Shown here: positions 5,739 to 55,900 of the stretch, in pieces
Layout: each line of letters begins with the position of its first letter
Position numbering within the stretch: the first letter of the stretch is position 1
Made by a program: the position numbers and the translations under genes
NCBI RefSeq assembly: GCF_964194025.1
Contig: NW_027450442.1
Span: forward strand, 1-64,000
Reading direction: 5' to 3'
Source of the DNA: Convolutriloba macropyga
Taxonomy: Eukaryota
DNA length: 64,000 nt
Notes under the pieces: generated by a model
Told to the model about the DNA's origin: nothing
Seen by the model: the letters and a program-made list of their open reading frames with translations, nothing else
Database searches by the model: none

Positions 5739-5880
5739 CGTAAGAATTTCGTTATGGTCCACCAATTTGAATCGAAGATTCTTTGCTGTTCGTGTCACTG
5801 TTGTCTGGATCACTGTTATCCAGATTACAGCTCTCCGGGTCACTGTTGTCCGGGTATCTGATTCGTGTTGTCGTTGTTGT

Positions 5881-5896: not shown

Positions 5897-5898
5897 AA

Positions 5899-19404: not shown

Positions 19405-20648
19405 NNNNNNNNNNNNNNNNNNNNNNNNNNNNNNNNNNNNNNNNNNNNNNNNNNNNNNNNNNNNNNNNNNNNNNNNNNNNNNNNNNNNNNNNNNNNNNNN
19501 NNNNNNNNNNNNNNNNNNNNNNNNNNNNNNNNNNNNNNNNNNNNNNNNNNNNNNNNNNNNNNNTTTTTTAGTTATGGATTCATCCCTAAGTTTGACTATT
19601 GCTAAATTTTTGTCTCAATCCTCTCCATCTATCAGAGAAAGCAATTCATAATTGTTTTTTAGAAATTGTTCGATCGAAGTCTTTTGTCATTGTTTTACCT
19701 TCAAAAATGGGTCCCTAACAAATAATAATTGCCTTCCTAAAGATTTTTGGCTTAATTAAATTCATGATTATATTTTTGATTAAATTCTAATTTTTCAAAG
19801 CATTTTGATTTAATTGGTACATGTATGTTTGCTTGTACCCCTATAAATTTTCACCCAAACGGTTGTGATAGATGATAATGATCGGTTCGACCAATCCTGT
19901 TTATTACCATTGTCGTTGTCGCTAGCAAGACAAATTAAATTCCAAACATTGTGTTTTGCATTCATATTGATATTTTGATGTATTTCTAAAGAATGATTGA
20001 TGCTGTAGTTATTAGATTGTTTGTTTTCACGCTGCCTGTTGGTTTGTCTAGTATAATCTGTTTCTTGTTAATTTTTTCTCACTTCAAGAAAAATTGCAAG
20101 TGAAGAATACTTTAATTTGATCTAATTCTAATTTTAAATCTAATTAGATTCAATTTTAATAGTTTTTAGCAACAATTCTTTCAAATTTAAGCTTATGTCA
20201 TAATGATTTCTCCTGTTTTATAAGTTGGGGTTTGCGGATTTCTATTTCATTAAAAAACTCTCTATTCAATTTAGAATTGTAAATTATAAGTTTTTCCTCA
20301 ATTCTACTCTAGTCAACTGTTTTTAATTTCTGGTATCTTCCATTAGAAATTACAAAACACTCATTTTTATAATGGATATCAGAATCATATTTAACCAATT
20401 AGCATCAGCACTGATCAACGCTGGCTTTCTAAATATTTGTAAAAGTTTTTTTCCAAATCTGTCTGTAAAAGAGCTTTTAAGTCACTGTAAAATAAAAAAA
20501 AATCTGGACAAGCTGTTTAGTAAAGATTGAATTGTTGTCTTATAAAACAGCTACCCCTCTCAATCCGAGGACTTTCCATGAACTCTACCTTCGGAGATAC
20601 TTTGTAGATCTGCTAAATTTTTCTTTCATTTTTTAGATTTATCAGATC

Positions 20649-21126
20649 AGAAATGTTTATATTGGCGCCTCCGCTAGCATGAGCTGCGATCGGCACCCAT
20701 ATAAACATTACTTTATTTCCCTTTGTTTTATCCACTATATTTCATTTTCTATTCCATCAAAATCTATCATTTCGTGTCTCACTTGGCACAGTGGTTAACT
20801 CGTTGAGTTGAGTTAAGTTGCCTTAGCAAACGGAAGGTTTGGCGTTCCTTCCTCACTGTCTCCAGTGAACGTCCCCCGATTTGATTAATTACTATTAAAC
20901 TAAGTGAGATAAAAAAAACAAAATTCACAGTTCTTAAAGAGAGTGATCCCTGCTTTGAGACTCTATACGGGACACACTGTGATGGGTATAAACTCAAAAA
21001 CGCTGAGATCGGTAGCAACACAGTGATCAGTGTTTTTACGTTTAGTATAACGTTTTATAATAAATCAAAAATTGATTATTCATATTGTTTCATTTTCAAA
21101 ATTAATTTTTATCCAAAATACCAGCT
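20649..21126 (+). repeat. Left terminal inverted repeat of the Maverick-type element
   Basis: Reverse complement of 25355-25832; the mirror ORFs 20779-21021(-) and 25460-25702(+) reflect this. Confidence 0.95.
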
Positions 21127-21159
21127 CAACTCTGTTATAGATATTGACTCATGGTCTAA

Positions 21160-21902
21160 GACTCATAAAATCTAAACTCACCATTACAATTTTTAATACC
21201 TTTATCGTCAAATGGATCAATAGCTATTTTGTATTGTTCTTTTGTTTCTAAATTATGTTTTTTTACTATCAATAGTATAATTAGTTACATATTTACTTTT
21301 TGCATCATAAATAGCATTTTTATAGTCTTCAATAGTAATTTGGTTTTTAATGGTAGCTTCTGTTATAACTTTTATCTTTTTCTCTTCCTCTCTTTTAAAT
21401 GTATTAAAACAATATGCTTTATCTTTAAGGAATCCGGATTCTATAATAGTATCAATAGGTATTTAGTCTTTCATTTTACCTAACTCCGAGTTGTGTAATA
21501 TATCTTTTATCTTATTCTTTCCAGTTTCTATATCATTATCTAAAAGAACATTTATGTTTTGAAAATACTATCAGTATCTGTGTAATGATAATCATAATAT
21601 AACTTTTTCTCAAAGTATTCATATATAGCTTTATGAATAAACATTTTAGCTTTCTTTCTTATAACAAAACCATTATAAATAAACTTCTCTAACTTAACAC
21701 TACCTCTTGGTTAATGTACAGCCATTAGTGCATCATCCAACTCTACAGAATATTCAAAACTAAAATATTTTACAATTTTAATATAACTATCCACATCATT
21801 AACTAACTCTACAACTTGTCTATTGTACACAATTTCTTTTCCATAGAAAGCATTATTCATTAACTTAAAGAATACATCACCAAATTTATCTCCCTTAGCT
21901 TT
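21160..21902 (-). pseudogene. Protein-primed DNA polymerase B, C-terminal fragment (second, inverted copy)
   Basis: FKLMNNAFYGK (motif B), HYTDTDS (motif C, about 21570-21590), ELGKMKD, KIAIDPFDDK; stops and frameshifts present. Confidence 0.92.
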
Positions 21903-24900
21903 CAATCAATTAAACATAAAAAGAATGAGCGAGTATATAATAGAAATAAATTTACTGAGAGTGCTAATGTAAATATAGAACAAAAGATAGATAAACAGAA
22001 TCCTGAACTAGAGGGAATAAAGTATTGTGATAATTGTGACATGTATCTAAATAATAATACTGAATATAGAAAACAAATAGGAACCCTAAAACATAGGAAT
22101 AATGTAAGGATAAATAATGGGAAAATAATAAAGAATGGCAGTAAGTTTGAATGTGTAACATGCAAGTCTACCTTAAGTGAATATAGTGTGGATCAACATT
22201 TAAAAACAAAGATGCATCTAGATAATGTTAAGGGTAAAGATAAGGATAATATATCTAAAGATAATTTTGAAACGCGGTCAATGACCCATAATATAACTGA
22301 AGATAGTACAGGCTATTGCGATACATGTTACCCTAGATATAACAATAAAAATAAACACACTGAATCAGATGAACATAAAGAAAATGTTAAACAAAAAAAG
22401 CTTGCTGATGGTATGTGGAGAGAGAAAGTGGTGAGTTAGGATTAGATCATAATATGAAGTATATTCAAATAATAATAACAAGTGGTAATTATGAAGAACC
22501 TAAATTGTTGAAAGTATTAGAGACAATGTAAAACATACATCCCCATATTAAGTTTAACACCTTTGATGTAGTAAAATATACAGAACCTAAAGATGATAAG
22601 TTAGAAGAAAATGAATTCATTCACATTTAGACTAACGACTAGACAACATAATGGACCTAATGACTTGGATATGATTAATAGTGAACTTGAGACTAGAATG
22701 CAAGAACAAAAAATGAAACAATCTGGTTGGAGCATGCAAAGATTTTTTAAAAGAACTATGTATATGCACAGGTTTTATCCTAGTGGTGGTTGTCATGTAG
22801 AACTTCACTTCAATCAAGATGTATACTTAATATACATAATAATGATAGTAAAGGTTTATTTGGGCGTTTAATAGCTTATCTACATCCTGCTAAATGTAAG
22901 TTTAATAGAACTAGTAATTATAATAAAACTGAACATAAAAATGAGATAAAACTACCAAAGTTTCCACCTCCTTATGGATAAAAAGATAAAAAGAAAATGC
23001 AAGAGTTAAACAAAGATAAAGTATTATTTAATGTTAACTTAAGTTATTTAATATAAATTAATCTAAATAAAAAAAATTGATAATCTTGTTTTAATCAATC
23101 ATAATGATCCTAAAGGATGTAAGTTTTTATACTGGAATAATCATTATTTCCTACGTAAAGATGTATCATTTTTATTAAGATCATCTACACATAAATATTA
23201 TCCATGTCTAAAATGTTGTGTGTTATTTCGAACTGAAAATGCGTTAAATAAACATTTAGAATTGTGTAATAATATTGGAAAAAGAATATTCCATCTTGAT
23301 GATTATCTAAAGTTTGATAAGTTCCACTATTAAAACAGAGTACCATTTGCTATGCATCATGATTTTGAATGTATAATAAAAAACAGAAATTACATTCCTA
23401 TTGCTTTTGGGTTTTATATATAAAAAGTGATTATTCTGATATCTTAGAAGATAAGTAAGAAAGTTTTTGTGGAGAAGATCCACAAAATGGCGGCTGGACC
23501 GAAGTCTTTGATTGGTTTATAAGTAGGATGAGTTATTATGATAAATTATTCAAAGAGATATTTAGTATAAATATTCCATTAAAAGGAGATAGTATTACTC
23601 CACTTCATATTGAATGTTATTATTGTAACGAAGATATGAGTGAAGACATTGTTAGAGATCATGATCACCTAAATGGTAAATATAGGGGATATGCTTACAA
23701 TAAGTGTAACCACCAATCCAAGTACATTTTTGTACCAATATATACATTTAATTCTACTAATTATGATAACCACCTATTTATAACTAAACTAGCAAAGAAG
23801 ATAAGACTTAAAGTATTGACTAAAACTGATGAGAATTATAATTGTATTGATATGAGTCATGCTAAACCATCAGATATGTTTAGGTTGTTCCATCCACTTA
23901 GCTTAGATGGTATAAGTAAAACAATGAATGATAAAGAGTGTGTAACAGTAAACACATTTGAGTAAGAGAGACAAAAATCTATATTCCCATTTGAATAGTT
24001 AGATAGTATAGATAAACCTAATGAAACATCATTACCACATAAGGAAGTATTCTGTTCTAAGTTGAAAAAAGTGGTATTACTAATGAAGAGTATAAGCAAG
24101 CATTAGATTGTTGGAATGAGTCTGGATGTGAAACAATGAATAAAATTTATGATGTCATATCTTAAAACTGATGTATTATTACCAATGGATGTATTTGAAA
24201 GGCTAAAAGATAAGTGTTTAGAATATTATGAAATGGATCCTTGTTACACATATTCCACTGATGTATTGTTACCAGTGGATGTATTTGAAAGGCTAAAAGA
24301 TAAGTGTTTAGAATATTATGAAATGGATCCTTGTTACACATATTCCACTCCTGGATTAACTTGAGTATGTGGATTGAAAAATACTAATGTTAGACTTAAA
24401 TATTATAAAGAAAATACAATTAATTTTTATGATAAAAACATCATGTTATTAGAGGTGGGTTAGCTTCACTATTGGTTGATTGTCATGTTGAATGTAAAAA
24501 TAAACAAATAGATCCTAAGTATAGAGGTAAAGAGAACTTTTTAAAATACTTAGACTTCAACTCATAATATTCCTCTGCCATGGTGCAAGCTTTACCTACT
24601 GGTGTAATGATCCAGAAACTGGCTTTGCAGAAAATAATTCCATCAGCTCTAGTAATAATACAGGCTATATCTATACCATTGGTGTAATGTATAATGATGA
24701 GTTTCAACAAAAAACAAAGAAGTATCCTTTCTTTCCTGAAAAGACAAAGGCTAAGATTGATCAGTTTACATATTATCAAAGTGAAAATGAAAAGCAAAGA
24801 TACAAACCAAATCAAAATTTGATGTTACAATTAACGGATAAGGCAGACTATGTAATTGATGGAGAGATGTTAGTTTGGTATTTAATTAAAGTTTTAAGGT

Positions 24901-25253
24901 TGGAAGATGTTACAATTAAGCAAAAGTTAGAGTATAGTAAAAGTGAAAGATTAAAATCTTATATTGAGTTTAACATTCAGAAAAAAAGAAGCTAAAGCTA
25001 AGGGAGATAAATTTGGTGATGTATTCTTCAAGTTATTGAATAATGCTTTTTATGGAAAAACAAAAGAAAATGTGTACAATAGACAAGATTTAGAGATAGT
25101 TAATGATGTGGATAGATACATTAAATTAGTGAAACATATCAGTTTTTAATATGCTGTAGAGATTGATGATGAACTAATAGCTGTACATAAAACATGAGGT
25201 AAAGTTAGAGAAGTTTAATTATTTTGGTTTTGTTATATTGGAGAAAGCTAAAT
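21903..25253 (+). pseudogene. Protein-primed DNA polymerase B (Maverick type) with N-terminal C2H2 fingers; lacks start and motif C
   Basis: QSGWS motif, HDFECII (Exo I), CYYC...VRDHDHLNGKYRGYAYNKCN (endonuclease VII-like insert), FNSTNYDNH (Exo II), YLKTDVLL (Exo III), IRGG, YLDFNS*YSSAM (motif A), FKLLNNAFYGKTKEN (motif B). Many stops and frameshifts. Confidence 0.93.
24167..24346 (+). repeat. 90-bp in-frame tandem duplication inside polB
   Basis: 24167-24256 repeated at 24257-24346 with two substitutions; peptide TDVLLP(M/V)DVFERLKDKCLEYYEMDPCYTYS occurs twice. Confidence 0.95.
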
Positions 25254-25354
25254 GGGTTTTAGACCATGTTTCAATATCAGTGATGTTGATTCGAAGATTA
25301 TTAATTTTTTCATATAAATATTAGCAAAAGAAATTAACAATCATAAAAGATTTA

Positions 25355-25832
25355 AGCTGGTTTTATTGGAAAAAAATTAATTTTGAAAATGAAACAATAT
25401 GAATAATCAATTTTTGATTTATTTTAAAACGTTATACTAAACATAAAACACTGATCACTTTGTTTCTACCGATCTCAGCGTTTTTGACTTTATACTCATC
25501 ACATTGTGTCCCATATACAGTCTCAAAGCAGGGATTACTCTTTTTAAGAACTGTGAATTTGGTTTTTTTTATCTCACTTAGTTTCATAGTAATTAATCAA
25601 ATCGGGGGACGTTCACTGGATACAGTGAGGAAGGAACGCCAAACCTTCCGTTTGCTAAAGCAACTTCACTCAACTCAACGAGTTAACCACTGTGCCAAGT
25701 GAGACAGGAAATGATAGATTTTGAAGGAATATAAAATGAAAAATAGTGGATAAAACAAAGGGAAATAAAGTAATGTTTTTATGGGCGCCGATCGCAGCTC
25801 ATGCTAGCGGAGGCGCCCATATAAACATTACT
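25355..25832 (-). repeat. Right terminal inverted repeat of the Maverick-type element
   Basis: Reverse complement of 20649-21126; ends ...CATATAAACATTACT. Confidence 0.95.
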
Positions 25833-27102
25833 CAGATCTTCTCCTTAAAAAAGGCCCAAGCATAATTTCAAAAACTATCTTTACTGTTAATCTTTAAAAA
25901 AAATTGCATGGTTTTTGTTTGATAAAATTTTGTGTTTTAAACCTACTGACGTCTCATCTTTATATAGTGGCATAGGTCCTTTCTTTTTTAAAATCTGTTA
26001 GTGCATTAATAAATAGTTCTCTGGAGAGTTGTCGTTGTTGTTCTTATTGATGTTTCATTAGGGAACCTGCTGTTGACATAAGCGTCATTGCAGCTTTGCT
26101 CCTCTACTTTAATTTGAAACAAAGTTAACTGAATAAATTATTTGTGTAACTATTATCCGTGGCTAATTTTTAGATAGCTTACACTTCCCGTCATTTATTG
26201 TCTTATGTCCAGCCTTTGTTTTTAGCATTCTAATTTTTCCACTAATTTTATTGGATTCACTTGTTTTTCATCCTCAATTTGTTTTTAATAGTGCTTTTTG
26301 TTCATTATCAATATAATTACCAATTTTTTAATAGGATATTCAAAAGTTAGATAAAATTATTCAAAAAAAATTTTACTCATCTTTTTTATAAAACTCCGAA
26401 ACCAATTCGGTGATTTTTAGTTCAATTTGTTTTGTTATTGGACAGGAAAAATCTAAGCTAAAATTCAGTGTCGCACATCGAATACTCATAGTACAATTAT
26501 TTTTGATTCAATCGAGAAACGTATTTTGTTTCTAAAACTGACCGAATAAATCGTTGAAGTTGACAGATTTATGTTTTCAAAATTGGAGCAAAATTGAAAC
26601 ACATTTATTCCATCTCATTTGGACATTTAATTATCTAACCCGGTTTGAGAAAAAAAAACGGAAAAATATGTAAGGTAAGCGGTGAAAAGTTGTTTTTTTT
26701 CGCCGCGATTTGCGTACATAATGTTGCCGTGAAATGCGGTGAAATTATGTAAGTTCACCGCTACAAACGAGCGAGCGTACACGGATTCGAAACTCTCACC
26801 TCCTGAATGTCCGCCACTTGTTCTTCCACTGCTCCACTTCTCACTATAATCAAGCATATCTGTTTTGAATTTAAATCAAATTTACTCTTCATTTTGTAAA
26901 ACAAACGCGTTGAACTTTTGAAAGATTAGCGGTGAAATGTGGTGATTTTTTGTAACTTCATTGCTTACTCTAGTGATGAAATTGCATAAATTCAGCGCGT
27001 AAAAAAAGTTTCAAAAAGATGTATGACTGGTCGTGGGTAAATTTTCGGAGATAATTTTAATAAATGTATCTTAACTTCGTTGAACAAAAACAAATCGGAG
27101 CG

Positions 27103-37619: not shown

Positions 37620-37685
37620 TTTGAAACAATAAAAATAAAAGAAGACAAATGAAACTAGGAATATTCAGCAAAACAATTATCTCGA

Positions 37686-38198
37686 CTAGTATTGACCTCT
37701 CATATAATTGTAACTCTGTCTCCAATGATTGCGGTATTTTGGGTTTTGGTTTGGATTACGTTGGTTGTTATTCAGAGCTATTAAATTATTGGATTTGGGA
37801 AGCAATTGAGAAAGCACACAATTTTTTAAAAAAGGGACACCTTGTTTGTAATGGAAATGCAAATCATCATAATACAAACTATCATAGCTTGGCATGGCTT
37901 TCATGAGGTCGTACACAATTGCAACTTTATAATTTTCATCACCTGCTAATGCATTTGTTTTATTATTAAAAAGTTTAATGCGCTCATTAATATGTTCGTT
38001 TTTTGGCAGATTACGAATTGGTGGCACTTGCATTAGTAAAATATTCTCAGGAGACAGCGTGTTTCTTGTTAAATCAACCAAATCTGTATATTTCTCAAAC
38101 AACTCGTCAATGTTTTTTTGTTTTTCTTTCAGAATTGAATTCGTCCCGTCCTGAATGAGAACTGTTTTGATCACTGTTTTTGGCAATTGTTTGCCCAA
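37686..38198 (-). pseudogene. LINE A ORF1 C-terminal SGNH/GDSL esterase-like domain
   Basis: VLIQDGTNSI (block III-like), LMQVPP, RIKLFN, YDDLHF (block V DxxH). Confidence 0.8.
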
Positions 38199-38509
38199 AA
38201 CAGTGATCCCAGAACTGTTTTGCCCAGAACTTTTTTACGTAAATTAAAAAAGTTTCATCAAAAAAAAGTTACTTAAAAAATTAATGATTCCACAAACGTA
38301 AAAAACATTGTTCCAGTTAGAATACCCCGTTCTATCAACTCAAATGCACATCCAGAGCAGTCATTTGAATCACAATAGGCCAACAATTTATGCTCTTTAC
38401 AAAGTGAAAGAATGATTTATTGTTGCTTAAGGCCCTTAACGGTTATTGAATACTATCAACACTTAGTTTCCATCTTGATACCCCGCTTTTAATGATTAAA
38501 TCGACGGAT

Positions 38510-41127
38510 TATGCGCACGTTTTTTCCGACCCCTCTTGAGGGGGAAGGAACTATATGCTCAAATGGGTTTTTTTTTGTTCAGTCAATTTTGGCCAATCGA
38601 TATATTCATCGTAGAGAGTTGAGAGTGGTATCATTAGAAAGCTTGTCCACCGTAGAATATAGAATTAAAAAGATTTTTTTCACTTTCGTTTTTTACGGAG
38701 AGATATCGAGGTTTCGATTTTGAGAAAATAGAGTGAATTCCAGTGAGATTTTATTCCCTTTTTCCGGAATTTTTGAATAAAACTTCGCCAATTTTGTTAA
38801 AAATTGTTAAATTTTTCAGAAAGTGTTGTTAATTTTTACTTGTAATGACACAAAAAATTGTAGGCTATTTTTAATAAATTTTTTGTCAACAATTCAGGCT
38901 AAATATTTCAATATAAAGACTTTTTCATAAAAGACAGCCCGAAATAAGATTTTTTAGTCCAGTTTGATTAAATTTACAGGAAGAAGAGACCCAAACAGCA
39001 CTAACACAATCTTTGTAGACCCAAAGGAGGGCTTTTTCTACCTCAAATTTCGTTGAGAGTGCTCTGTAACTGAAACTTTGCCGTTTTCTGCTAATTTTAT
39101 TCGTTGATTATCAAAAACGCAAAATCTATTTTAACTAACAAAATATCAATATCTATAACATTCGAATAACTAAGTGTTCCTAATGGACAAACAACATTAG
39201 CAGGGCTAGTTTCGGACCAATCGTGGACTGGTATAATCCAAAAATAATTCGGATCAAAATCAGTCGGTCTTTTTCTTAAAAAAAGTTTGATCTTTTCTAC
39301 AATAATTAAGTAACAACAGAACATTTAAAACCAAAGCTCACTGATGATAGTTTCAATTGGTTTCCTTTTTAGCTCCATAATATTGTGTCTAGTTGATTAC
39401 TCGACAGCTTATGGTCGTTTTGACTTTTAAAAGTATTTGATTTTTAAGTTGCCTTGAAGTTGCCTCTATTTTTCTCTTACTTTGATCAACTGGTAGTTTA
39501 TTGTAAGCAACGAAAGAATGCTTCTTTTTTCTTTTTGAAATCAAATTTAACAATTATGGCGGCTTTATGCCTTAAGATATGGTTCTCTGGATATGACACT
39601 ACTAGATTTCACTTTTTAAAAAAATTTTTATGTATTTGCGTTGCGCATTTTTCACGTTTTCTAGTTTTGTCACATAATCACGTTATTGACAGTTCATATA
39701 TAACATTATGGGATTTCAAAATAAAGCAGAATTGATAAAACTTAAAACCTTGAAGATATAGATTATGAATTTATCGGCTTCGACACTACTTTCTCGAAGA
39801 ATTTATTTGAATTTTTTAAAAATTGTCTTTAAGTGCCGCTTTTACTTTGTCTTTTTAGTCGTATCAAATTCCCTGTACAATGACCCAGTTTCATTGGTTT
39901 TTTAATGGACGAATGGATGAGCCAATATTCTGATATTAGTAGATAGCTGAAGGCCTTCATGACTCTGAAAACAATTGTTTTCCAAGTTAAAAAAAAACTT
40001 TTTAACTTCGCAATTTTGTTGCTTTTTTTGTCTGTTTGTTATCTAATCTCGTTATTTACAGGCCAAATATGACATTATTTTTTGCCGAAGGAAGGTTTCA
40101 AAAGGGTATTGGTTTCACACAATCTAATATATTTGGAGAATTCGTTATGACTTTATTGGCTTCGACACGGTTTCTTCAGAAGAGAAATCAAATTAATTTT
40201 TGATTTGACGTTTTTTTGTAGACGGAAAACATGTTCTGGATAATTGCAATTCTCTGGGGTTTTGGATGAATAAAAGAACCTATTTAGATATTTCATTCTG
40301 TAATTAATGGCGTTCATGTCTTTGGAAAAATTTTTCTCGAAAAAAATTAAAATGTTACTTCATTTTGCACTTTTTTAAAAAATTTATTCCACCTGTTACC
40401 TAGCTTCATTAATGAGAGGTCACATAATCGTTTATCGGTGCTCGCAAAAAATGCAATTATCATATTTTGATGGCCATATTATGGTTTTACCGTTTCGAAA
40501 TCCTTTTCTGCCAAGCTTTAATTGATTTTTTTGTTTGTTTTCTATTTGTTGTTCTTTTTGTAACCGCATTAAAAAATTGAATACTGGCAGTTCTTAATTC
40601 CTTCTATAGAAGCATTGGTAATCATACACATATGAAATTTTTAGTTGGTTTCTAATGGTTTTCATTACTATGAAATTAATTGTTTAAAAAAAAATAAGCG
40701 AATTTTTCAATTTTACTGTTTTTGTTCTTTATTGTCTAACTGTTACCAACTTTTTTCATTGACTAGTCCCATATCTTTTCTGGTGAAATACAAGTTTTTT
40801 TTGTTTATTATCAGTTTTATCTGACGCAATTTTGACTTTCTTATTAAGCTTTGTTTTTTAAAACGGACATGAAGTTCTTGATGTAATTAATTTTTGTTGT
40901 TGTTGTTGTTGTTGTTTGATTTTGCTGTTCGTTTTGACTCGCTTTCTTACTATTTGCACATCTCATCAATCTAATGAACCATTTTTACTCCATCACTAAG
41001 TTATTTGCTTTGGAGGCTATCTTTTCGTTCATACACCAATTTTTTTAAAAAAATAATTGAAATTTTGGGTTTTTCTATGTTCCTCATCAAAATTGTGGAT
41101 GAGCGGGGTCGGAACCTTATGCGCGAT
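38510..41127. mobile_element. Possible old non-autonomous DNA element with degenerate internal repeats of about 350-380 bp
   Basis: Weak inverted ends (GCGCA...TTCCGACCCC at 38514-38535 vs GGGGTCGGAA...TGCGC at 41105-41124); recurring anchors GGCTTCGACAC (39776, 40158) and TGTTA(C/T)C (40037, 40394, 40741). Confidence 0.35.
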
Positions 41128-41849
41128 CGCACATTACCGAGTTGCCTTGTTGACTTTAGTCTGAGGTTTCTATGAAACGTTCCCCGCTTTTAACTCAAGA
41201 AAATCAAGCGTCTTGGAGGACTGATTTTTAAGATTGCAAAACCACCTAGGTTTCCGTCTGTTACTTGAACGTTTTTCTTCTATTAAATGCCATTAAACTT
41301 ATTTGCTGTGACCTTGCAATTTTCGTTCAAAGCTGATGAGAGGATTTCGAGGGACCGAGGTTTTTTGCTGAAGTATTACGAGTACTTCCTAGAGAAACTC
41401 GTCAAAGACTTGGCGCCAACAATTATATTAGTTGCAAAATTTATCGTTTCCCACAAAAACTCAATAATGCAAACTAAACAGGGGCTTATTTTCTTAACCT
41501 GCTCTTGTATTACTAACCCTAGTTACGAAACTGGATCATACACCTGCCTACTCTCAGAATTGCGATTTCGTGAGGTCATGCGTCAATATTTGTCTTCAAT
41601 TGCTCCTCGCTACAAGTATTGGACGGTATTTGTTAGGGTTATTGGTCAGAGTTTCAAAAATTTGGATGTATTTTTGTAACTTTGTAATTTGTGTATTGAT
41701 TTTTTTGATAAGTTTGTATTGCTTTGAACTTAACTAAGTACTATACTTAATACTTAGTTAAGGAAATAGAAGTCAAATAGACTTGTCAAATATATAAACA
41801 CGAAATTGAACACGAAAATGATGAAAATTTATCATGGACTCATACATAT

Positions 41850-41888
41850 ACAAACACACACACACACACACAAACACGCAAACAAACA
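41850..41888 (+). repeat. (CA)n-rich microsatellite
   Basis: ACAAACACACACACACACACACAAACACGCAAAC. Confidence 0.85.
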
Positions 41889-42247
41889 GGAACATTTTTT
41901 TGATGCTCAAAAGTCAAAAAGCAAAGTCAGCAGCGTAAATTTATATGAACGAACACGCTGATAGATTTTTTTTCTCTGTTCACATTCTTCATTGAGAACG
42001 TTATCTGACAAAGACCTCTTTTTTTGTTTTTGCGATAAAGCAAACAAGTTTTTTTTCTTCTACAATCAAACCGAATTATTGGGTATTCTATATCTGGACT
42101 TCAAACTGGTGAGACCAAACCAATTTAACCTTTAATTTAATATAGCCTCATTTTCAGGACGCGTCTTTTTTTTCTGGTTTATGCTGGAATAACTGAAACC
42201 AATCACCCTAAAGCATAGATATCAATAAGACAGACACTATTTCGGGT

Positions 42248-43121
42248 TTGTCAAAATGGACAAAAGAGAAACTAGTAAGCGCGGTGATGCAACTAAGAAA
42301 TCAAAGAAGGGAGTCATTTAACTTAGCAAACAAGAATCAAGACAATAACCAAGAATTGGATAGACTTAAGCTCGAATTGGAACATCAGAAAGAACTTTAT
42401 AATCAAGCTCAATATGAGATTCAATTTTTGAGGAGTCAGAATGATAAATTAAAATCAAATTTAATTAGCGAAAAAACAGTAGAAAAAGATGGCGTGAAAT
42501 CTACTGTCAACCGTCATTTTTATCCAAATTTTGTTCCTCGTTTCACAAAACAGTTATTTATTTCTGACAGCTCGTATAAACTGGTTCGCCAAAATGACAT
42601 CAGTAATGATGCTGCCATTTATTCTTATCCATCTTCGACAATAAAAGACCTCAATAATATCATTGACAATTATGCGCCATCAACAAAAGCAGAATGTCTG
42701 ATTATTCATTCAGGACATAATTCCATTGATCGAGGTACGGCAGGAGAAGATGCCGCTAAAGAGTTGGGAGTCGTTTTTATCGAAGTGCGTTAATAAATTA
42801 AAGCCCTACAAAGTAGCGATTTGTAAATTACCCAAGGTAAAAAACGGCAGTCTTGGACGCGAAACTAACAATAATGAAATAACCAAATTTAACCAGGCTT
42901 TAGACGATATAGCAGATGGTTTAAGCGGCGAGTTCCAAAATACCGACATAAAAGTTCTGGATTATAATTTGGAAAAAACATATATTCGAAATGATGGCAT
43001 TCATTCTGATCAAAATGGAATCCAGAAAATGGTTTTTAGCTTAAGAAATTACATATCAAGTGTGGGGTATCAACCTTCTGTCAGCAACGTATCTATGAGA
43101 CGAAGGCTACGAAAAACATAA
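42248..43121 (+). pseudogene. LINE B ORF1: coiled coil plus SGNH esterase-like domain, one frameshift near 42775
   Basis: Heptad-like ELDRLKLELEHQKELYNQAQYEIQFLRSQNDKLK; LFISDSS (block I), IHSGHNSI (block III), RNDGIH (block V). Confidence 0.88.
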
Positions 43122-43134
43122 GACAAACGCAAAC

Positions 43135-46048
43135 TTGCATCCATGTTTTGAATACACAAATATTAGAAGCGTTAACAACAAACACGAAGAAATTTCGGAT
43201 TTTTTGCAGCAGCAGAACAGACAAACATGCTTTATTGTTACTGAAACATGGATTAAAGATAATCAGAAGATACCCATGATTTTTTTCAGCAACAATAACC
43301 ACTTTGTTCATCAAAGCAGATCAAAATTGACGCAGTTAACGAGAGGTGGTCGAGTAGGAATATGGGTACCAAATACATTCAAACATAAAATACGGAATGA
43401 TCTCAACTCTATTAACAGAAGTTTTTTTGAATCACTATGGCTTGAAATACAAGCACCGTTTAAGGAAAAACTTCTAGTAAACGTTTCTTATTGTTCCAAC
43501 AAAAACTTGGGCGAATTTTTTCTAGAAGAGTTGACATCAGAAATTTCAGGCGCATATTCAATAACAGATATTGTAATACTATTTGGAGACTATAACATCA
43601 ATTTTTTCAATCAAAGAGAAAGAGAGTTATTGACAGAATTTGCTTTCACCAATGGGCTTGATATAGTAAATAAAAATACTCCAATCTGAACAAATGGAAA
43701 TCAGGAAACACTGATTGATCACTGTTTAACAACAAAACACCAAATTTTGGATACAACTGTTATCGAGCAGTTATTTGGAAGTGATCATTTTACACAAATT
43801 TTCCTTTCGTCACTGGATATCGATTATGAAAACAACAAAACGCAGTGGTTTACAGGGATACTAGCCAATTTAGTAGAGTTATTCTTAACAAAACAATTGC
43901 ATCCGCGGATTGGAGTCCCATGTATCAACAAAACAATGCAAACTCAACTTTTGAAAAATTCTCAAATATGTTTGAAATTATTCTGAATAATGTAGCTCAC
44001 ATTAAAATAGGAGAGCCATCGTCAAAGTCAACAAAAAAGAAATGGTTATCCAGAGAAATATTGAATTTTATCAGCGAAATGCAAAGGTTTTTCAATATTT
44101 GGAAGGAAAAAAGACGTTGACACATATAGCTCATACAAAAGAATAAGAAACCATACAACCAGACTACTTAGAAGAGCGAGTCACAGTTATTCACAGAGAT
44201 TGTTCGAAAAACTTCCCGATTTAAAACAACAGTGGAAATTCATTAAAACAAAGATTAAACACGAGGATAAAAACAGCGAAATTTCTAGAATTCGCGAAAT
44301 TTCTAGAATTCGGTTCAAACAAGATATTTTAAAAGACAAAAAAGAAATCGCTAACACAATTAATATTTGTTTTTCTAAATTAGGTTTATACGATGGCAAG
44401 ACAGAAAAAGTTGAGCTACCGGACTATGATTTTGACAAAACTGAGTTTTCCTTCAGACATATAACGAGAAAAGAACTGTTTACTGTAATTGATCAATTAC
44501 CACAAAACAAAGCAGCGGGTCCTGGATTACTTACTACATGGTCCTTCAAGTGTAGCAAAATGTCTATTGGAACACATCTTCAGTTTGCAATAAACGAATG
44601 CATATCAAAAAGTGTTTTTCCCGATGTACTTAAAAAAGCATATGTAACTCCAATTTACAAAAAAGGTGATCCACTGGAAGCAGAAAACTACCGACCAATT
44701 TCAGTTACACCGACTCTTGCAAAAATTTTTGAAAGACTTTTGCTCCAACAAATGCTAGAACATGTTGAAAAGTATGAAATAATCACTAAAAATCAGTTTG
44801 GGTTTCTGAAAAGAAAATCTTCGAATGATACAGAAATATCGTTGACAGAATCAGTGGACAGTTTGTTAGAAGAAAACGAAACCGTTGTTAGTATTTTCAT
44901 GGATTTGGCCAAAGTTTTTAACTCAATATCTCACAAAATTTTTCTCGAAAAAATTGCAAAAAATGGATTTAGTACGGAATCAATTGCAATGCTAGAATCG
45001 TTTTTATCTAACAGAAAACAATGCGTAAAGAACGGCATTGAATATTCGAACTGGGTGACAATCAATCACGGAGTACCTCAAGGAACAGTTCTCGGACCTT
45101 TAATTTTTATACTTTATTTCAACGATTTCCCAGAAAAAATGAAAAAAGAGAGGACGTTTTACAGTTTGCAGATGACACATGCATTCTTTGTCATTCCAAA
45201 TCTGATGAAAATCTGTTATGCGAAATTAACAGTGTATTTGAAAATACTGACAGTTATATGAGGCAAAATATGCTAACCTTAAACAGAGATAAAACAGAAA
45301 TTGTGATTTTTTCAAAAAATGGTGAATCAAAAATTGAACAATTTCAATATAATGGAATTTTCATAGAGCCAAAAACAAGTTGTCGTTATTTAGGTATAAT
45401 GATTGATAGCAATCTAAATTTTGATATTCAGCTAAACAAAACGTTAACAAAAATGGCAAATGCTATTAGGTCAATTTACTTAGTAAGACATTTTCTACCA
45501 TTAAAAGCAAGAATCGGGCTGTTTAAATCACTTGTTTTGTCCCATCTCAATTTCAATGCCATTTTTTTTTTCAATCGTTGTCGGTTAAGTCACTTCAGAG
45601 AGTTAATAGACAAATAACTTGGGGAATAAAGGTTTGCCACCTGCGCAAAAATTTTGACAGCGCAAGAGATCTATTCTTGAAAGACAAAATTTTACCAGCA
45701 GAGCTTTTCATTAAAAACGTTTGTCTTCTTAAATTTTTTGACCTCTTCTCACAATATAAAGAGAGCAGTCGAGAAACCAAAAACTCCTCATTCAAGATTT
45801 TTGAAAAGTACGAACTGACCAATAACGCCAGAACTCTCCAGTACTTCCCAAAGAATAAGTGCCAATCCAAATGGAGTGACAGATCACTGATTAGAAATTT
45901 TTCTAGGAAGTGGAATAATTTGCCAATTGAAATCCGAAAAGAGAAAACTAATAAATTTAAGGAAAAACTAAGCAGCGAAATGGTCAAACTGCATGAACGT
46001 TTTCCAATAGATAGACAAATAACAGGCTTTAGAAGTTTGTTCTACTGA
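43135..46048 (+). pseudogene. LINE B ORF2 (CR1/L2-like AP endonuclease and reverse transcriptase), frameshifted
   Basis: YTNIRS, VTETW, RGGRVGIW, FGDYNI, LIDHC, GSDH (APE); NYRPIS, DLAKVFNSI, GVPQGTVLGP, LQFADDT, RYLGIMID (RT). 18-bp tandem duplication at about 44276-44311. Confidence 0.95.
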
Positions 46049-46128
46049 AGTATAAAGACCAAAATATTCATATATTTACGAAGCGATTTTGAAAATGTAA
46101 ATATTTAACCAAACGTTTTTATGGTTAA

Positions 46129-46311
46129 AAAACCAGCACTGCTTGGAAATGTCCCGACCCCTGCGAAATTTTAACGTATATAAAACGTCTTCTACGTACG
46201 TCCTCAATACTCATGCGCGGATTACCACATAAGCACACGTTCAAAATATCGGTCAAAGTTCAAAAGAATATCAAGGGAACACGATCGAAACACAGAAGAT
46301 TCCAGATTTGA
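46129..46311 (+). repeat. Module downstream of LINE B, homologous to 33895-34085 (inverted); contains TATATAAAA
   Basis: Direct alignment with the reverse complement of 33895-34085; TATA-like motif at 46177-46185. Confidence 0.88.
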
Positions 46312-49900: not shown

Positions 49901-52900
49901 AAACATTGATTTACAAATAAAATTGCAGAAAAAGAAGCAATATTCACAAAAAATGAAGGCTTCAGATAAGTCAGACAGACGAGAGAACAAACACACGGAC
50001 CATAAATTGTGCGGGAGACTAATTGCAGTATAATCGCGAGTTTTAATCAATTTTGAGAAGTGTCTTAGTCCTATGTGCCGCCTGTTTAGGAAATGTTTGT
50101 GCAAAAGTTTAGTGCACTTATCCTGGATTTGAAAGTCATTTCGGAAAGTAGGTAATTGTGGAAAACACGTCCATTATGGTACTTGAATCAGTGTACTAGA
50201 GTCCTAAATATAGTATTTCATACTCTTTGCGAAAAATACTTTAAAAATTTGGTGGGCTTATCTAAATTATCCAAATTCGATTCACTTCAAAAAGGGTTAA
50301 AAATTTTGTGGAATGCCCTTACCGCTGAATCTAACTCTTAATCACATTTCTTTCCATTCTTTCCATTATTTTCCATTTAAGCTACTTACTTTCCGTGTTG
50401 ACACTTGATTTAGGCGCTTTTCACATTGGGCGTCAGAAGACGACGGGAAGTTCAAGCCACATTTTTGAACTAGTTTTTTGTTTTGTCGAAGCTTGTAATA
50501 TTTAGGTGTTATTGATATGAATTTTGAACCATGTTCTCTGCTTTGGATAACTATTTCAGCTGCTGAATTTGCATATGATTATGTGACCAGGTTCTTTTGT
50601 GTTTGTATGTGGCAATATCCTCTCTGGGTAGGGGGTCGACTTTTCAAATTTTTCAAGTTTTTCGAAAACCTTTTTTAGATTACCACCAATTCTTTGGTTT
50701 CCACGCACCATTTTTCCTTGATTTTCTTGTTTTAATTTATGCATTATTTATGCATTATTATTTATGCATTACAATTGCATACCAATAATGAGCGACAATG
50801 TCGATAGGAGAACATACCTTGTTAGTGTTGACACACGTGGTGCCCTGGTCACAACTGTGTCTGGGAGGATTGCATGTGTTTTGGTGTGAGTTTGAGTTGT
50901 AGCAACTCTCTTCATCTCTCCCGTTAGAACACTCCAACATTCCATTGCACACTGCTGTTTGGAACACACATTGCCACCTACACAAAACATAAAAATCACG
51001 AGTTACAGTCAACATTAGGTACCTCCAGGGGATGCATGATAAGGGGGGGGGGGGGGGCTCTTCCTACGTTGAAAAATCGGAGCTCAAAAAAATTTGAAAA
51101 ATTGGATCTTGACTGATCGTGCTAATCATTTCTTTGTATGGTCACATTCGCAGCTTCTGATTTCACTACGGCGAATCCATAAGGATTGAACTCTAAATAG
51201 CCATGCTTTTTTGAAGGGGGCACGGCCAAGTTGCCAACTCACAGTCATGGTGTGCTGGTCCTATCTATATATTTATCTATCTACTTATTCAATTATTTGT
51301 TCATAATTCAAAAATGATCTTTTTCTGTTTATTCGTTTGTTACCTTCACTACCTGCATGATGTATTTTATATTTCATTTCAGGAATTAACGAGTCTTTTT
51401 TCCTCACTTGGTGAATTTTCCTCACGATCAATCACACAGTAATTGAAGTAATATTAAAAAAAGTTTGATAGTTATGATTGTTGACCTGCTGCATCTGAAC
51501 TCGTAACTCTGGCACTGTCTCGTTTGAGCGTAAGGAGGCACGGCCAAGTTGCCCACACACAGTCTCGAACTCTCGTCCTCTCCCAGCAAACAGTCCTATC
51601 ACATTAAATCAAATTAATTCAACATCAAATTAATTCCACATCAAATTAATTCCACATCAAATTAATTCCACATCAAATTAATTCCACATCAAATTAATTC
51701 AACATCAAATGAATTCAACATCAAATTAATTCAACATCAAATTAATTCCACATCAAATTAATTCAACATCAAATTAATTCAACATCAAATTAATTCCACA
51801 TCAAATTACATCAACATCAAATTAATTCCACATCAAATTAATGAGAGTTCAAGCTTGCTACATTGTCTTAACTCTAAATTTGGGACAGAATGCACAAACA
51901 AACAATCTGTCGCTGTAAATTTCGGTCATTATTGATACTTTATCCTAGTTTTGGACCTAGATCATTCTCGTGTTCTCAGGTATAGAGGATTATTAATAGC
52001 TATTTCAGGCTAAATTTGGGAGTCAATCAGTGATAGTTGTTGAGACCTGTACTGATCAATTATGAACTTTATTTGCGCTTTTGTGATGCGTGATATGAAA
52101 TATCCCCCCGGATGTTTTTTTGGTACTACTATATAATGGGCGGTTATATTGTACGTATGATTAATGTACTTAGCATGTGCTCCTAATAACAGTTGAATAA
52201 TTTGTAATTCCTCGCATAATTTAGATAATGTTGTACCTCGTATCCGTCGCATCTTCTAGAGAGTGGAATGCACTTGAGTTCACTCTCACAGCCATATTCC
52301 TCTGGAAGACACTTGAAATCCACCTGTCCACCTGGGTTGCTTCCACCACACCCTGTCTCATCCGACCCATCCAGACAGTCCTTGGCACCATTGCACCTGC
52401 AACACCACCAAATTTTTGTTACCAATTTTTAGAGTTGGATCTTTGTATATTAACATGCATTCATTAACAACTAAATAAAGGTTTATTACACTGTATTCCA
52501 ACAGTATTGGCCACTGCAATCGTCTGCTGGTATCGAATTTATTAAGTTGCCAGAATCTCATATGGCTGGTTTCCACTTTGGTGTTTTTAATACATCGTAA
52601 TTGAACTATACGTACTTACAATTAATAGTTTAAATTGGTCTTAAGTCTCAGTCTCTGTCTTCTAAAGTTTTCCACTTTATTCCAGTATTCCAGTACTGGT
52701 AGACTCTGGGAGTGTCATTCGCAGTACTTACAACTATTTTTCCCGAAAACTTTTTTGTTTCCATAAAGCTTGTAAAAATAAATAAACAATGCCAACCATT
52801 CGTTTGTTATCCGATTGAAAATATCATAGCAAGCTTCGCAGCTTTGCATTTCTGGTTTTAGTCCGCTATGAGAAAATTTCTACAGCCTGTTGTACATATC

Positions 52901-55900
52901 CTATTCTATTTTTTGGTCAGTCCAATTCTGTTAAATTTTGTTCATGTTTAACTCAGTGAGTGAAAGTAATGTGTATATGGGCTTACAGGGCCAGGGGAGG
53001 GGTGACACAATTGAGTTTTAGAAATTATGTGTCTCCCCTCCCCTGGCCCTGTAAGCCCATATACACATTACTAGTGAAAGGTTTTCCTTATGACTGCTGA
53101 ACAAAGAATGAGATCACATTGTGTTCACTCCACCCACCTCTTAGTAGCCTGAATACACTGTCGTCCATTATAGCACGCCCACTCATTCTGGTAACAGTTT
53201 CCTGGCGAGGGAGGTTGAGGCTGAGGGTTGACTCCTCCACCACCTCCAGATGGACAGTTGAACTCATCCGATCCATCCGGACACTCTGGCACTCCATTGC
53301 AGTAAGCACCCGGGGCAGCACACGCTCCATTGAGACACTCGAATTCCAGAAGGGTGCAGCTGAACACAAACGACTGATATTTTTTTGGTTTTACTTTCTG
53401 GTTAATATTTATAAATCATAACTTGGTTTCCTGAATGTACTAATAAGTTAGCATGTGTTATAATGCACAGGTGGTAGCTAATTAAGTGGGGGCCATACTC
53501 TGTGTCTGATCAAAACTTAGACATCAAATCTGATCAAGTTTCATTGAATTTGGTCACGTCAGCGGGTTAACTACGGACAAATTCAACGGATAAGCTTCTT
53601 GATTCAAATAGAACTCGAGGCTTGTTCTATGAAAGCAAAAAACTTCTAATCCATTGGTTTACTTTCTCAGAGTCACAGCAGGCTGTAATACTTTCCGAAG
53701 GTAACTTGAATTTTGTCAACAAAAACACTTTTCGATTTGAATACAACGACTGAAATGTCCGAGAACAACATACGTACCCGCAATTAGCCTCGTCACTTCC
53801 GTCTCCGCATTGACTGATTCCATCACAGAGTGTAGCCATGGGAACACACCCCCCATTGGCACAGGTGAACTCCACCCCCTGCACACACCCACACCCTGAC
53901 TCATCGGACCCGTCCTCGCAGTCGGCAACTCCATTGCATCGAAGATATTTCCCTAAAAACCGCCACCTTTTCAACGATCAGGCTAGCAGCTTAAAATTGT
54001 ACTGATAGAGCTCAATGATCGAATGATCGAATGGTAGTCTTCGAAAGCCTGTGAACTTCTGCCACCAAACTAGCACGCATTCTCAAAGCGTTCTTTAAAG
54101 GCACCAGTTTTTGATTTATATTTTTCTAACTGCATGCCTATAAGTTTTCATTATTCTTTAGGCGTCATGTAATCAAGTTTTTAATTCTAAGATTAGTGAA
54201 ATCAGACAACGCTGACCCAGATGCAGACTTGCGGATGAAACAAAGTTCCTGGGTGAAACTAAGCTTGAAAGATCTGGGCAAAACATAAACTAGGCATTTT
54301 TGCACTGAGACGTTATCGGGGCGAGAGAGGAACATGTTGAAATGATCGAAACTTGAAGTTGGCCACAAACTTGAAGCCGATTTGAAGTTGTGCACATTTG
54401 ATTTTTAGTATTCAATACTGGTCTTCGCGTTCGCGTGAGACTAAAATATTTTTCTCGAGCTAGTTGTGGATGCTTTGACTAATGGATCTCATGTTGTACG
54501 CACCAACATCCGCATGGACTCAACACGGCCCTGCAATCAGTTACGAACTACCTGTGAACTTCCGATAACTATGCCATAGCTTGTTCAGGCAATGGTCCAA
54601 GAGCCAAATTACATTGCATTGTCGTATCGGACATAGTAGTATAAACAGTAGTTCAGGCTTTAGGGTTTTTCCAGGTGTGCCTCGAGGCACCCTTGTTTTC
54701 GTTTCCAACTTCTATTTGATTCTCTTTGGTGCGTTGCACGGCTCAAATTTACAGCATACTTCACTTGCATTTGTTGTTCAGTCCTATTTTGTATGAAAGA
54801 AATTCCAGTAGATTTATAAAATTCCAGTACATGTCCCGTCATCGCAGTAACAACAATAAGCCTTTAACACCTTCGCAGCTTATTGCAGTGCTTGCAGAGT
54901 ATCAGGAGCGCATAGGAGCTATAGTGTATTGCCCCAGAGAGGGAATTCTTGACATTTACTATCAGCTCAAGCTTAGTACTTTAGTTACCGTCAATATAGT
55001 GAAAGACTGTGTCTAGACAGAAGGAGCCCAGTGTAAAGCGTTAAATCAGAAGCCGGCGCTTGACCTGAAAACCCACTAGTGTTGTTAGCACACAACCTGT
55101 GGTCTTCGATAGCACTAATGACCCAAAAAACTTTCAAAGCGCCGTCCTAAAACGCTTTGCACCCGTCATGCGTTCGAGGAGGCGGAACTCGTCCAAGCCA
55201 TTGATATCCTAAATGATACTTAGTCTTCTGTTGTTGGGGTATACCCGCTGACTGGTGGTGTGAATTAGTTTACTCACGAGTTTCGGGTTATTTTGTGGTT
55301 GGTTGTCTCCAATAGCGCTTCAAGATATTTCGCTCCCCTGAAAATTTTTTTGAGTTAATCACTACCGTTTGTTTTCCGCAGGTTATCTGGCTCGTTTTTT
55401 TGCTTCCGTCTTTTTGTTTTCGTTTCGCCGTGTTTTTTTTCTGTTCACAGTTTATCTGTTGTATTATGTAATATGTCGTTTTTAATGTAAAATTTTTCTG
55501 CTAGTATGCTGGTTGGTTGTTTAGTCTCGTTGCTTGCTAGGGCCCAACTCGAGTTCGTTCTAGAGGTATGGCTGGTTCATTTAATGGCGTTCACCACACT
55601 AGTTGGCTAGCAATTCGTTGTATCTTGGTTAATTTTGGTAGTATGTGCTTTTGTTTTCTGGGTATTGTGGCTTGCTAGAGTGTAATTTGTTTTCTAGATT
55701 TACGGCTAGTAAATTTTCTGACCTTTTCGACTTTTTGTTATACTATTTCGTTGCCGTAAATTGTTTTGATAACGGTAGATAAAGCCCGTAATGACTTGTG
55801 CTAATTTGCTTGGCAGTAGTTTCTCTTTTTGGGGTGTGACAAGTTTGTTCTGGAGTTAGGAATAGTTTCTTTGGGTGTTTGTCGCTGTGGTCTGCTAGCA

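What the first reader, a model, noticed from the sequence alone, without database searches (positions are those of the whole stretch)
52959..53078. 108-bp hairpin mini-element with Maverick termini and its own 6-bp TSD: candidate Maverick-dependent MITE
Seen: a near-perfect fold-back (44/45-nt arms, 18-nt loop) beginning AGTAATGTGTATATGGGC and ending GCCCATATACACATTACT, flanked by an exact AGTGAA duplication. The PolB element 27 kb away has the terminus AGTAATGTTTATATGGGC (17/18 identical) and also a 6-bp TSD. Beyond nt 18 the two are unrelated, so this is not simply a deletion remnant of that copy. Established: Mavericks/Polintons have AG...CT ends and make 6-bp TSDs with a retroviral-like integrase, and MITEs are usually described for cut-and-paste transposase families. 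Inference: an 18-bp end signal is enough for mobilisation, and tiny non-coding hairpins parasitise the PolB/integrase machinery of this Maverick lineage. I do not know of a described family this small, but I cannot search to confirm novelty.
Basis: partly seen in the sequence, partly recalled or inferred. Interest (0 to 1): 0.9.

Follow-up and report, generated by a model that had tools for sequence, protein, structure and literature searches.

The report
Tiny hairpin insertion with Maverick ends
A 108-bp non-coding DNA hairpin in an animal genome carries the same 17-18-base ends as the virus-like Maverick transposons of that genome and the same 6-bp insertion scar, so it was put there by Maverick-type integration; only one copy was seen, so it is not shown to be a multiplying parasite of Mavericks.

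Summary
Window 52965-53072 is a 108-bp fold-back (arms 44/45, 18-nt loop) flanked by an exact AGTGAA duplication. Its terminal 17 nt are identical to the tips of Mavericks in what is probably the same assembly.

The "PolB element 27 kb away" (20649-25832, TSD CAGATC) is a real but defective Maverick derivative.

- Ten of 12 Maverick termini examined are themselves 54-66-bp fold-backs. They consist of the outer 18-mer, a polar conserved spacer and an inverted 18-mer, and the arms co-vary.
- The hairpin shares only the 18-mer. It lacks the spacer, so it is not a stand-alone copy of any sampled terminus.
- The 5.2-kb element is an inverted duplication of a Maverick right end ("copy-back"-like) that still has a perfect TSD. 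Palindromic two-identical-end derivatives therefore do get integrated here.

Best reading (confidence about 0.45): a miniature, trans-dependent Maverick-end element integrated as a small unit. The main rival (about 0.3) is the collapsed remnant of a full element from an unsampled subfamily.

No second copy was found in about 304 kb sampled, and no empty site could be found. Copy number, the decisive fact, is untested. I rate it a new variant of a known kind, of moderate interest.

The parts
52965..53072 (.). 108-bp non-coding fold-back element (hp108): arms 52965-53009 and 53028-53072, loop 53010-53027
52965..52982 (+). left terminal 18-mer shared with Maverick tips
   Evidence: profile positions 1-18 only
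53055..53072 (-). right terminal 18-mer (inverted copy)
52959..52964 (.). target-site duplication AGTGAA, left copy
53073..53078 (.). target-site duplication AGTGAA, right copy
20649..25832 (+). 5.2-kb defective Maverick derivative: the right-hand part of a Maverick plus an inverted duplicate of its right end. It lacks the ATPase, capsid and integrase genes.
20643..20648 (.). TSD CAGATC of the 5.2-kb element, left copy
25833..25838 (.). TSD CAGATC of the 5.2-kb element, right copy
20649..20712 (+). 64-bp terminal fold-back module (outer 18-mer, polar CCTCCG spacer, inverted 18-mer), left end
25769..25832 (-). 64-bp terminal fold-back module, right end
20649..21902 (-). left arm of the extended inverted repeat. 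It carries an inverted copy of PolB C-terminal coding sequence and is about 2-4 times longer than native TIRs of the lineage.
24994..25832 (+). right arm of the inverted repeat (native right end)
21903..25252 (+). broken zinc-finger/PolB gene region, given as one part. Homology to relatives is split into many pieces over all three frames, and the N-terminal part of the upstream ORF is missing.
   Evidence: counts and outer bounds only

Best explanation
hp108 is a miniature, non-coding derivative of the Maverick lineage of this genome. It is a duplex whose two ends are inverted copies of the 17-18-nt Maverick tip. It was inserted as a small unit by the lineage's retroviral-type (rve) integrase, which left the 6-bp AGTGAA duplication.

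It has no genes, so everything it needs would come in trans from Mavericks. Only the tip is shared, so the tip is the part recognised.

Its form fits a pattern seen at three scales here:
- each Maverick tip is a 54-66-bp fold-back;
- a 5.2-kb derivative is a right end joined to an inverted copy of itself;
- hp108 is a 108-bp fold-back.

I infer that such palindromic molecules arise when replication of the linear element switches strands near an end (copy-back), giving a molecule with two identical, integration-competent ends.

Shown: the anatomy, the shared tip, the TSDs, the Maverick gene set of relatives, and the inverted-duplication structure of the 5.2-kb element.

Inferred: integration as a 108-bp unit, trans-dependence, and the copy-back origin.
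For: - Perfect 6-bp TSD and near-perfect arms.
- The tip is identical over 17 nt to L057 and L061, 16 nt to L062, and 14-15 nt to L058, L059 and L060. The motif occurs 6 times in the window against 0.02 expected.
- Relatives carry PolB PF03175, rve, DJR capsid and A32 ATPase.
- rve integrases typically make 6-bp TSDs (PMC12220804). Vertebrate Mavericks have AGT...ACT-type end motifs and perfect 6-bp TSDs (PMC8097293).
- hp108 shares nothing but the 18-mer with 12 termini: alignment scores are at chance, and the profile matches positions 1-18 only. It lacks the polar CCTCCG spacer, which is exact in 9 of 12 termini (7 of the 10, plus L099 and L100). This is as expected for a unit evolving on its own under constraint on the tip only.
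- The 5.2-kb neighbour has a perfect TSD although its left arm is an inverted duplicate of the right end. That arm reaches about 1250-1290 nt from the tip, against 330-575 nt of native left/right similarity, and holds 217 PolB residues against 26-57 in a native left end.
- An in-situ deletion of about 16 kb leaving only 45-63 nt at each end is a priori unlikely.
Against: - Only one copy was found in 303,758 nt sampled, and the sample is biased towards Maverick loci.
- No empty site or second haplotig is on record.
- No parent whose tip continues as the hp108 arm was found among 12 termini.
- The Maverick copies sampled are mostly degraded (fragmented ORFs, 58-78% amino-acid identity between copies), so a current source of integrase is not shown.
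- A 108-bp duplex is short for both ends to reach one integrase complex (general knowledge, not tested).
- A protein-word search with the frame running through the hairpin found nothing. This is uninformative, because the window's own ORF was not called.
Confidence: 0.45

Rival explanations
1. In-situ remnant. A full-length Maverick of an unsampled subfamily was integrated at AGTGAA and later collapsed to 108 bp.

There are two routes:
(a) 'Solo fold-back'. Each tip of these Mavericks is a near-palindrome, so the outer arm of the left tip and the inner arm of the right tip are direct repeats. Recombination or slippage between them deletes the whole interior and leaves one terminal fold-back between the intact TSD, as in solo-LTR formation.
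(b) An ordinary internal deletion with breakpoints 45 and 63 nt from the two ends.
For: - Ten of 12 termini are fold-backs with 18-21-nt arms present as direct repeats at the two ends.
- hp108 against its own reverse complement is 89% identical over its length, so a 108-bp terminal fold-back would behave like a short direct terminal repeat.
- Solo remnants are known for another self-synthesising transposon, the casposon solo-TIRs (PMC4779613).
- The Maverick population here is old and decayed.
- Only a single copy was found.
Against: - hp108 lacks the polar spacer that marks genuine terminal modules (exact in 9 of 12, near-variants in the other 3). Its interior matches none of them. Route (a) therefore needs a parent lineage with a quite different, 108-bp module that was not seen.
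- No solo copy of the common 54-66-bp module was found in 304 kb, although 12 termini were.
- Route (b) needs both breakpoints within about 60 nt of the ends of a roughly 16-kb element.
Confidence: 0.3
2. A member of a different transposon superfamily that also makes 6-bp or similar TSDs, or a host palindrome, whose ends resemble Maverick tips by coincidence.
For: Only the short tip is shared. The interior is unrelated to any Maverick sequence sampled.
Against: - 17 of 17 identity at both ends with tips of Mavericks of what is probably the same genome.
- An exact 6-bp duplication has about a 1 in 4096 chance of arising by accident.
- In 304 kb the motif occurs nowhere except at Maverick tips and hp108.
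- Hits in metagenome, viral and prokaryote collections are single, unpaired chance matches.
Confidence: 0.04
3. Assembly artefact of a long-read assembly (spurious fold-back).
For: The relatives come from a contig-level long-read assembly. The window is probably from the same one.
Against: An artefact would not carry a lineage-specific 18-mer at both ends or a precise 6-bp duplication. The flanks are unique and continuous.
Confidence: 0.02

Closest known systems
Maverick/Polinton self-synthesising virus-like transposons
   Same: AG...CT-type tips beginning AGT, a 6-bp TSD and TIRs. Relatives encode protein-primed PolB, rve integrase, DJR capsid and A32-type ATPase (features as described in PMC8097293 and PMC5499653).
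   Different: hp108 is 108 bp with no genes, whereas intact vertebrate Mavericks are 12.7-24.6 kb (PMC8097293). The 54-66-bp terminal fold-back with a polar spacer was not described in any paper I could search.
[quoted passage not shown]
   Same: Small and non-coding, with TIRs matching those of an autonomous family only at the tip, a TSD of the partner's length, and a hairpin-forming shape.
   Different: The partner would be an integrase-bearing, PolB-replicating virus-like element, not a cut-and-paste transposase. High copy number, a hallmark of MITEs, is not shown.
Solo-LTRs and casposon solo-TIRs
   Same: A small terminal remnant left at an insertion site of a larger element (PMC4779613).
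   Different: hp108 has both element ends and an intact TSD, and it does not match the terminal module of any sampled Maverick.
Copy-back (snap-back) defective genomes of viruses (general virology, from memory)
   Same: Molecules with two identical, complementary ends made by a strand switch during replication. The 5.2-kb element (stem about 1.25 kb, unique centre) and hp108 (stem 45 nt, loop 18 nt) have that shape.
   Different: Here the products sit integrated in a chromosome with TSDs. The replication step itself is inferred, not observed.
Foldback-type transposons (FB, Galileo)
   Same: Long inverted terminal structures and hairpin-like derivatives (Galileo is discussed in PMC3573991, listed).
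   Different: Those belong to P-element or other transposase families, with different TSD lengths and no PolB or capsid genes.

Membership tests
Maverick/Polinton (the lineage that owns the 18-mer tip) | [quoted passage not shown] | tested here: met
   PF03175 is found in long relatives of the window's fragment and in sister loci L060, L061, L062, L063, L065, L066 and L099.
Maverick/Polinton (the lineage that owns the 18-mer tip) | Retroviral-type (rve) integrase | tested here: met
   PF00665 has an unmarked precomputed hit (E at most 1e-5) in L065. My own scans gave E 1.8e-6 in L062 and 4.8e-6 in L059, both just under Pfam's gathering score.
Maverick/Polinton (the lineage that owns the 18-mer tip) | Capsid and packaging module (DJR major capsid, A32/FtsK-type ATPase, cysteine protease) | tested here: inconclusive
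   DJR-like PF21738 scores 78.6 bits and Pox_A32 PF04665 scores 32.4 bits, both above their cut-offs, in L062. No protease family was detected by Pfam. The minor capsid protein was not identified.
Maverick/Polinton (the lineage that owns the 18-mer tip) | TIRs, AG...CT tips and a 6-bp TSD | tested here: met
   The 5.2-kb element has TIRs and an exact CAGATC TSD. All 12 tips begin AG and end CT. A TSD could not be checked for any full-length element, because no locus held both ends.
Maverick/Polinton (hp108 itself as a member) | Encodes PolB and integrase | tested here: not met
   It is 108 bp with no genes. It can only be a non-autonomous derivative or a remnant.
MITE (hp108) | Small (under about 800 bp), non-coding, TIR-bounded | tested here: met
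   108 bp with 45-nt arms. There is no Rfam match.
MITE (hp108) | TSD of the same length as the presumed autonomous partner | tested here: met
   A 6-bp AGTGAA, against the 6-bp CAGATC of the Maverick derivative.
MITE (hp108) | Tip similarity to an autonomous family in the same genome | tested here: met
   14 to 17 nt are identical to the tips of six sister Maverick ends (L057-L062) in the BLAST. The L065, L066, L099 and L100 tips match the 18-mer with 1-3 mismatches, and the window derivative's tip is 17/18.
MITE (hp108) | Multiple dispersed, homogeneous copies with different TSDs | tested here: inconclusive
   One copy in 303,758 nt. The whole genome could not be searched with these tools.
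MITE (hp108) | Insertion polymorphism or an empty site | not testable with these tools
   No second haplotig or paralogous locus is on record. The flanks are unique in the sample.

The most novel reading that the evidence does not exclude
Animal Mavericks of this lineage replicate as free linear genomes whose ends are structured, self-complementary modules. Strand-switching during that replication throws off palindromic defective molecules of any size, from 5 kb down to about 100 bp. The integrase accepts anything that ends in the 17-18-nt tip. hp108 would then be the first example of a MITE-like parasite of a self-synthesising, virus-like transposon, and it would define the minimal cis signal for Maverick integration.
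Probability: 0.3. Interest if true: 0.75.

Novelty: new variant of a known kind. Interest (0 to 1): 0.55.

Why it matters
How Mavericks/Polintons move is still unknown: whether by an extrachromosomal replication cycle, what the integrase recognises, and whether they excise. PMC2836005 states that the excision mechanism is unknown.

Natural derivatives are the only descriptive handle on the cis requirements. Three observations bear on them:
- a 108-bp element keeps only the 17-18-nt tip yet has a clean 6-bp TSD;
- a 5.2-kb two-right-ends derivative also has a clean TSD;
- the terminal fold-back has co-varying arms and is conserved across diverged subfamilies.

Together they suggest that the tip alone suffices for integration, and that replication intermediates with strand switches exist. 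If the hairpins prove to be a multi-copy family, repeat annotators would need to look for Maverick-dependent miniature elements, which current classifications assign only to cut-and-paste families.

Tried and rejected
1. Public-collection scans for the 18-mer. There were 55 metagenome hits, 1 viral hit and 32 prokaryote-genome hits. All are single and unpaired; the metagenome and viral hits, which I also checked for extension, showed none, and the prokaryote hits were judged from the one-match-per-locus table. I treat them as chance. The 21-mer found nothing in viral contigs. The metagenome scan used the GGGC variant only and so missed the commoner GGGT variant.

2. Protein-word search with the reading frame that runs through the hairpin. 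There were no candidates, but this is uninformative.

3. Haplotig or empty-site search through ORFs near the hairpin. Only one ORF is on record, on one contig, in a cluster of one.

4. Enlarging the genome sample through transposon ORFs recorded on many contigs. None exists.

5. Getting both ends of a full-length element through two genes on one contig. The contig holds rearranged tandem copies without termini.

6. Permissive scan for AGTAAT...ATTACT pairs with a TSD. Only hp108 passes. L059 4765-6243 has a 6/6 flank match, but its arms are unrelated (18/40), so it is chance.

7. hp108 as a stand-alone copy of the terminal module: rejected.

8. Known RNA family: no match.

9. Literature. No paper in the library describes a Maverick-derived MITE or a terminal fold-back in Mavericks. 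The founding Polinton papers are not held, so I cannot exclude that short non-autonomous Polintons are listed there or in Repbase.

Full report
**What is there**

Window 52965-53072 is a 108-bp fold-back. It has 45-nt arms with one mismatch and an 18-nt loop. As single-stranded DNA it folds at -54.8 kcal/mol, z = -17. It is flanked by an exact AGTGAA duplication at 52959-52964 and 53073-53078.

Its first 18 nt and their reverse complement at the other end recur in the window only at the two ends of an element at 20649-25832. That makes six sites at up to 3 mismatches, against 0.02 expected. That element has its own exact 6-bp duplication, CAGATC.

A 7-bp reading of the hairpin's duplication is formally possible, because the next base is A. 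The 6-bp reading keeps the AG...CT symmetry and agrees with the unambiguous neighbour.

**Setting**

The window is repeat-rich animal DNA. It holds BEL/Pao and other reverse-transcriptase ORFs. An exon encoding two LDL-receptor class A repeats lies about 560 bp from the hairpin on the minus strand. The hairpin's flanks are unique in everything I sampled, so it sits in single-copy, probably intronic or intergenic, host DNA.

**The lineage that owns the tip**

The 168-aa open segment at 23459-23962 gets only a sub-threshold Endonuclease VII-like hit in Pfam. An exhaustive HMMER search links it to 1170-1330-aa proteins in which this motif directly precedes PF03175, the protein-primed PolB.

More than 140 fragmentary relatives of 58-78% identity lie on long ENA contigs. 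All 12 loci I could fetch come from one assembly, ERZ25071359, which is probably the window's own genome. These loci carry:
- DJR capsid-like genes,
- rve integrase,
- an A32-type packaging ATPase,
- a P-loop protein of a very large family,
- PolB.

L062 is the most intact copy. This is a genuine Maverick/Polinton lineage. No protease was detected.

I examined twelve termini from eleven elements. Ten are 54-66-bp fold-backs. Each consists of the outer 18-mer, a G+C-rich spacer and an inverted 18-mer. In L058 and L059 the inner arm is degenerate.

The arms co-vary. Positions 9, 15, 18 and 19 differ between elements, but both arms of a terminus carry the same variant. The pairing is therefore maintained, or one arm is copied from the other.

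The spacer is polar. It begins with CCTCCG at nt 20 in 9 of 12 termini and with near-variants in the other three, always in the same orientation relative to the tip, at left and right ends alike. A profile of the 12 modules scores the ten fold-back termini at 35-71 bits in the outer-to-inner orientation and 18-35 bits reversed. The two degenerate ends (L058, L059) score about 46 bits forward and about 9 bits for a partial reverse match.

hp108 shares only the tip with these modules. The tip is 17/17 identical to L057 and L061, and 14-16 nt to others. It has no CCTCCG spacer. Its interior scores at chance against the inner 150 nt of all 12 termini. The module profile matches it only over positions 1-18. 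Its tip variant, G at position 9 with C at position 18, was not seen in any sampled Maverick.

The PolB region of this element is collinear with that of relatives, but the homology is broken:
- It is split into eight pieces over three frames against the L062 ORFs.
- It is split into five pieces over three frames against the C-terminal piece of L061. The two sets overlap, so there are on the order of ten frame disruptions.
- The upstream zinc-finger ORF lacks about 200 N-terminal residues.
- The right-hand copy lacks about 130 C-terminal residues that the inverted left copy still has.
- All genes to the left of PolB are absent.

The left arm is an inverted copy of the right end. It reaches about 1250-1290 nt from the tip and contains 217 PolB C-terminal residues. 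In contrast, the native left end of L062 holds only the last 26-57 residues, within 438 nt of the tip. Native left/right similarity reaches 330-575 nt.

A single strand switch during replication of a free linear genome (copy-back) gives exactly this shape. An in-situ origin would need two template switches while keeping the left junction intact. The element nevertheless has a perfect TSD. I therefore infer that a palindromic, two-identical-ends molecule was integrated.

**Explanation**

The hairpin's two Maverick tips and its 6-bp duplication show that a Maverick-type integration happened at AGTGAA. rve integrases typically give 6-bp TSDs (PMC12220804). Mavericks have AGT-type end motifs and perfect 6-bp TSDs (PMC8097293).

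The open question is whether the integrated unit was already 108 bp. I favour that reading, with confidence 0.45, for three reasons:
- hp108 shares only the tip with every sampled terminus.
- A collapse of about 16 kb to within 45-63 nt of both ends is unlikely unless it is structure-driven.
- The same window shows that palindromic defective derivatives do get integrated.

The main rival (0.3) is an in-situ remnant. I note a specific route for it. The tips are near-palindromes, so the outer-left and inner-right arms are direct repeats. Recombination between them would leave one fold-back between the intact TSD, like a solo LTR. Casposons leave solo-TIRs (PMC4779613). Against this rival, the hairpin is not the module of any sampled subfamily, and no solo copy of the common module turned up in 304 kb.

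**Limits**

- I could not search the eukaryotic genome as a whole.
- About 304 kb was sampled, and the sample is biased towards Maverick loci. It held one hairpin.
- No empty site, second haplotig or orthologue was available.
- No full-length element had both ends within a locus, so 6-bp TSDs are documented only for the two small elements.
- The organism is not identified.
- The Maverick copies seen are mostly decayed, so a present-day source of integrase is not shown.

**Novelty**

In the searchable literature I found non-autonomous Polintons mentioned only in passing, and no MITE-sized derivative or terminal fold-back. The founding papers and Repbase could not be consulted. I rate this a new variant of a known kind, with interest 0.55.

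- Scripts printed only counts and outer bounds for the broken PolB region.
Consensus lines printed by the alignment tool were not used.
- While reasoning, I worked out from the repeat table roughly where the two arms of the 5.2-kb element differ in length. That place is not given in this report or in my notes.
- The N stretches were left alone.

Noticed in passing
window 20649-20712 and 25769-25832; L057 12360-12424; L060 12106-12159; L061 12749-12814; L062 6604-6664; L065 12675-12739; L066 12307-12371; L099 14181-14245; L100 12905-12969: Maverick tips of this lineage are 54-66-bp fold-backs with co-varying arms and a polar, conserved CCTCCG-type spacer. This may be a cis element for replication or integration, and I did not find it described in the searchable literature.
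   Followed up: yes
L057, L058, L059, L061 right-end flanks: Four of eleven right-end flanks begin with AAC (AACGAG, AACAAA, AACAGA, AACAAC). This could be a target preference or a 3-nt longer tip in one subfamily. It is unresolved because the left ends were out of reach.
   Followed up: partly
window about 52979-53002 (and the other strand of the right arm): The hairpin's arm contains four runs of three or more G with loops of 6, 3 and 1 nt, which is a canonical G-quadruplex pattern. I read this off the sequence and did not test it.
   Followed up: no
window 24167-24349: A 90-bp tandem duplication (2 copies, 97% identical) lies inside the PolB region of the 5.2-kb element.
   Followed up: no
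window 33897-46311: Inverted repeats bracket two reverse-transcriptase-bearing copies in opposite orientation (34468-35505 on the minus strand, 44200-45261 on the plus strand). This is probably two retroelement copies head to head.
   Followed up: no
window 1493-5999 (-): BEL/Pao-type retrotransposon ORFs (DUF1759, zinc knuckle, RT, Pao peptidase).
   Followed up: partly
window 27103-27397: A 100-bp tandem repeat (2.9 copies), each unit containing short palindromes (GCGGTGAA...TTCACCGC).
   Followed up: no
window 51608-51842: A 16-bp tandem array (14.7 copies, 94% identical) lies 1.1 kb from the hairpin.
   Followed up: no
window 53630-53977 (-): An exon encoding two LDL-receptor class A repeats. 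The best PDB matches are LRP2 and VLDLR. This is the host gene nearest the hairpin.
   Followed up: partly
L063 5110-12899; L099 3582-8313: Tandem duplications inside Maverick copies: P-loop plus DJR genes twice in L063, and the A32-ATPase region twice in L099. This shows frequent rearrangement of these elements.
   Followed up: no
window 10601-19563: Five N gaps lie in very AT-rich simple-repeat DNA (GC about 25%).
   Followed up: no
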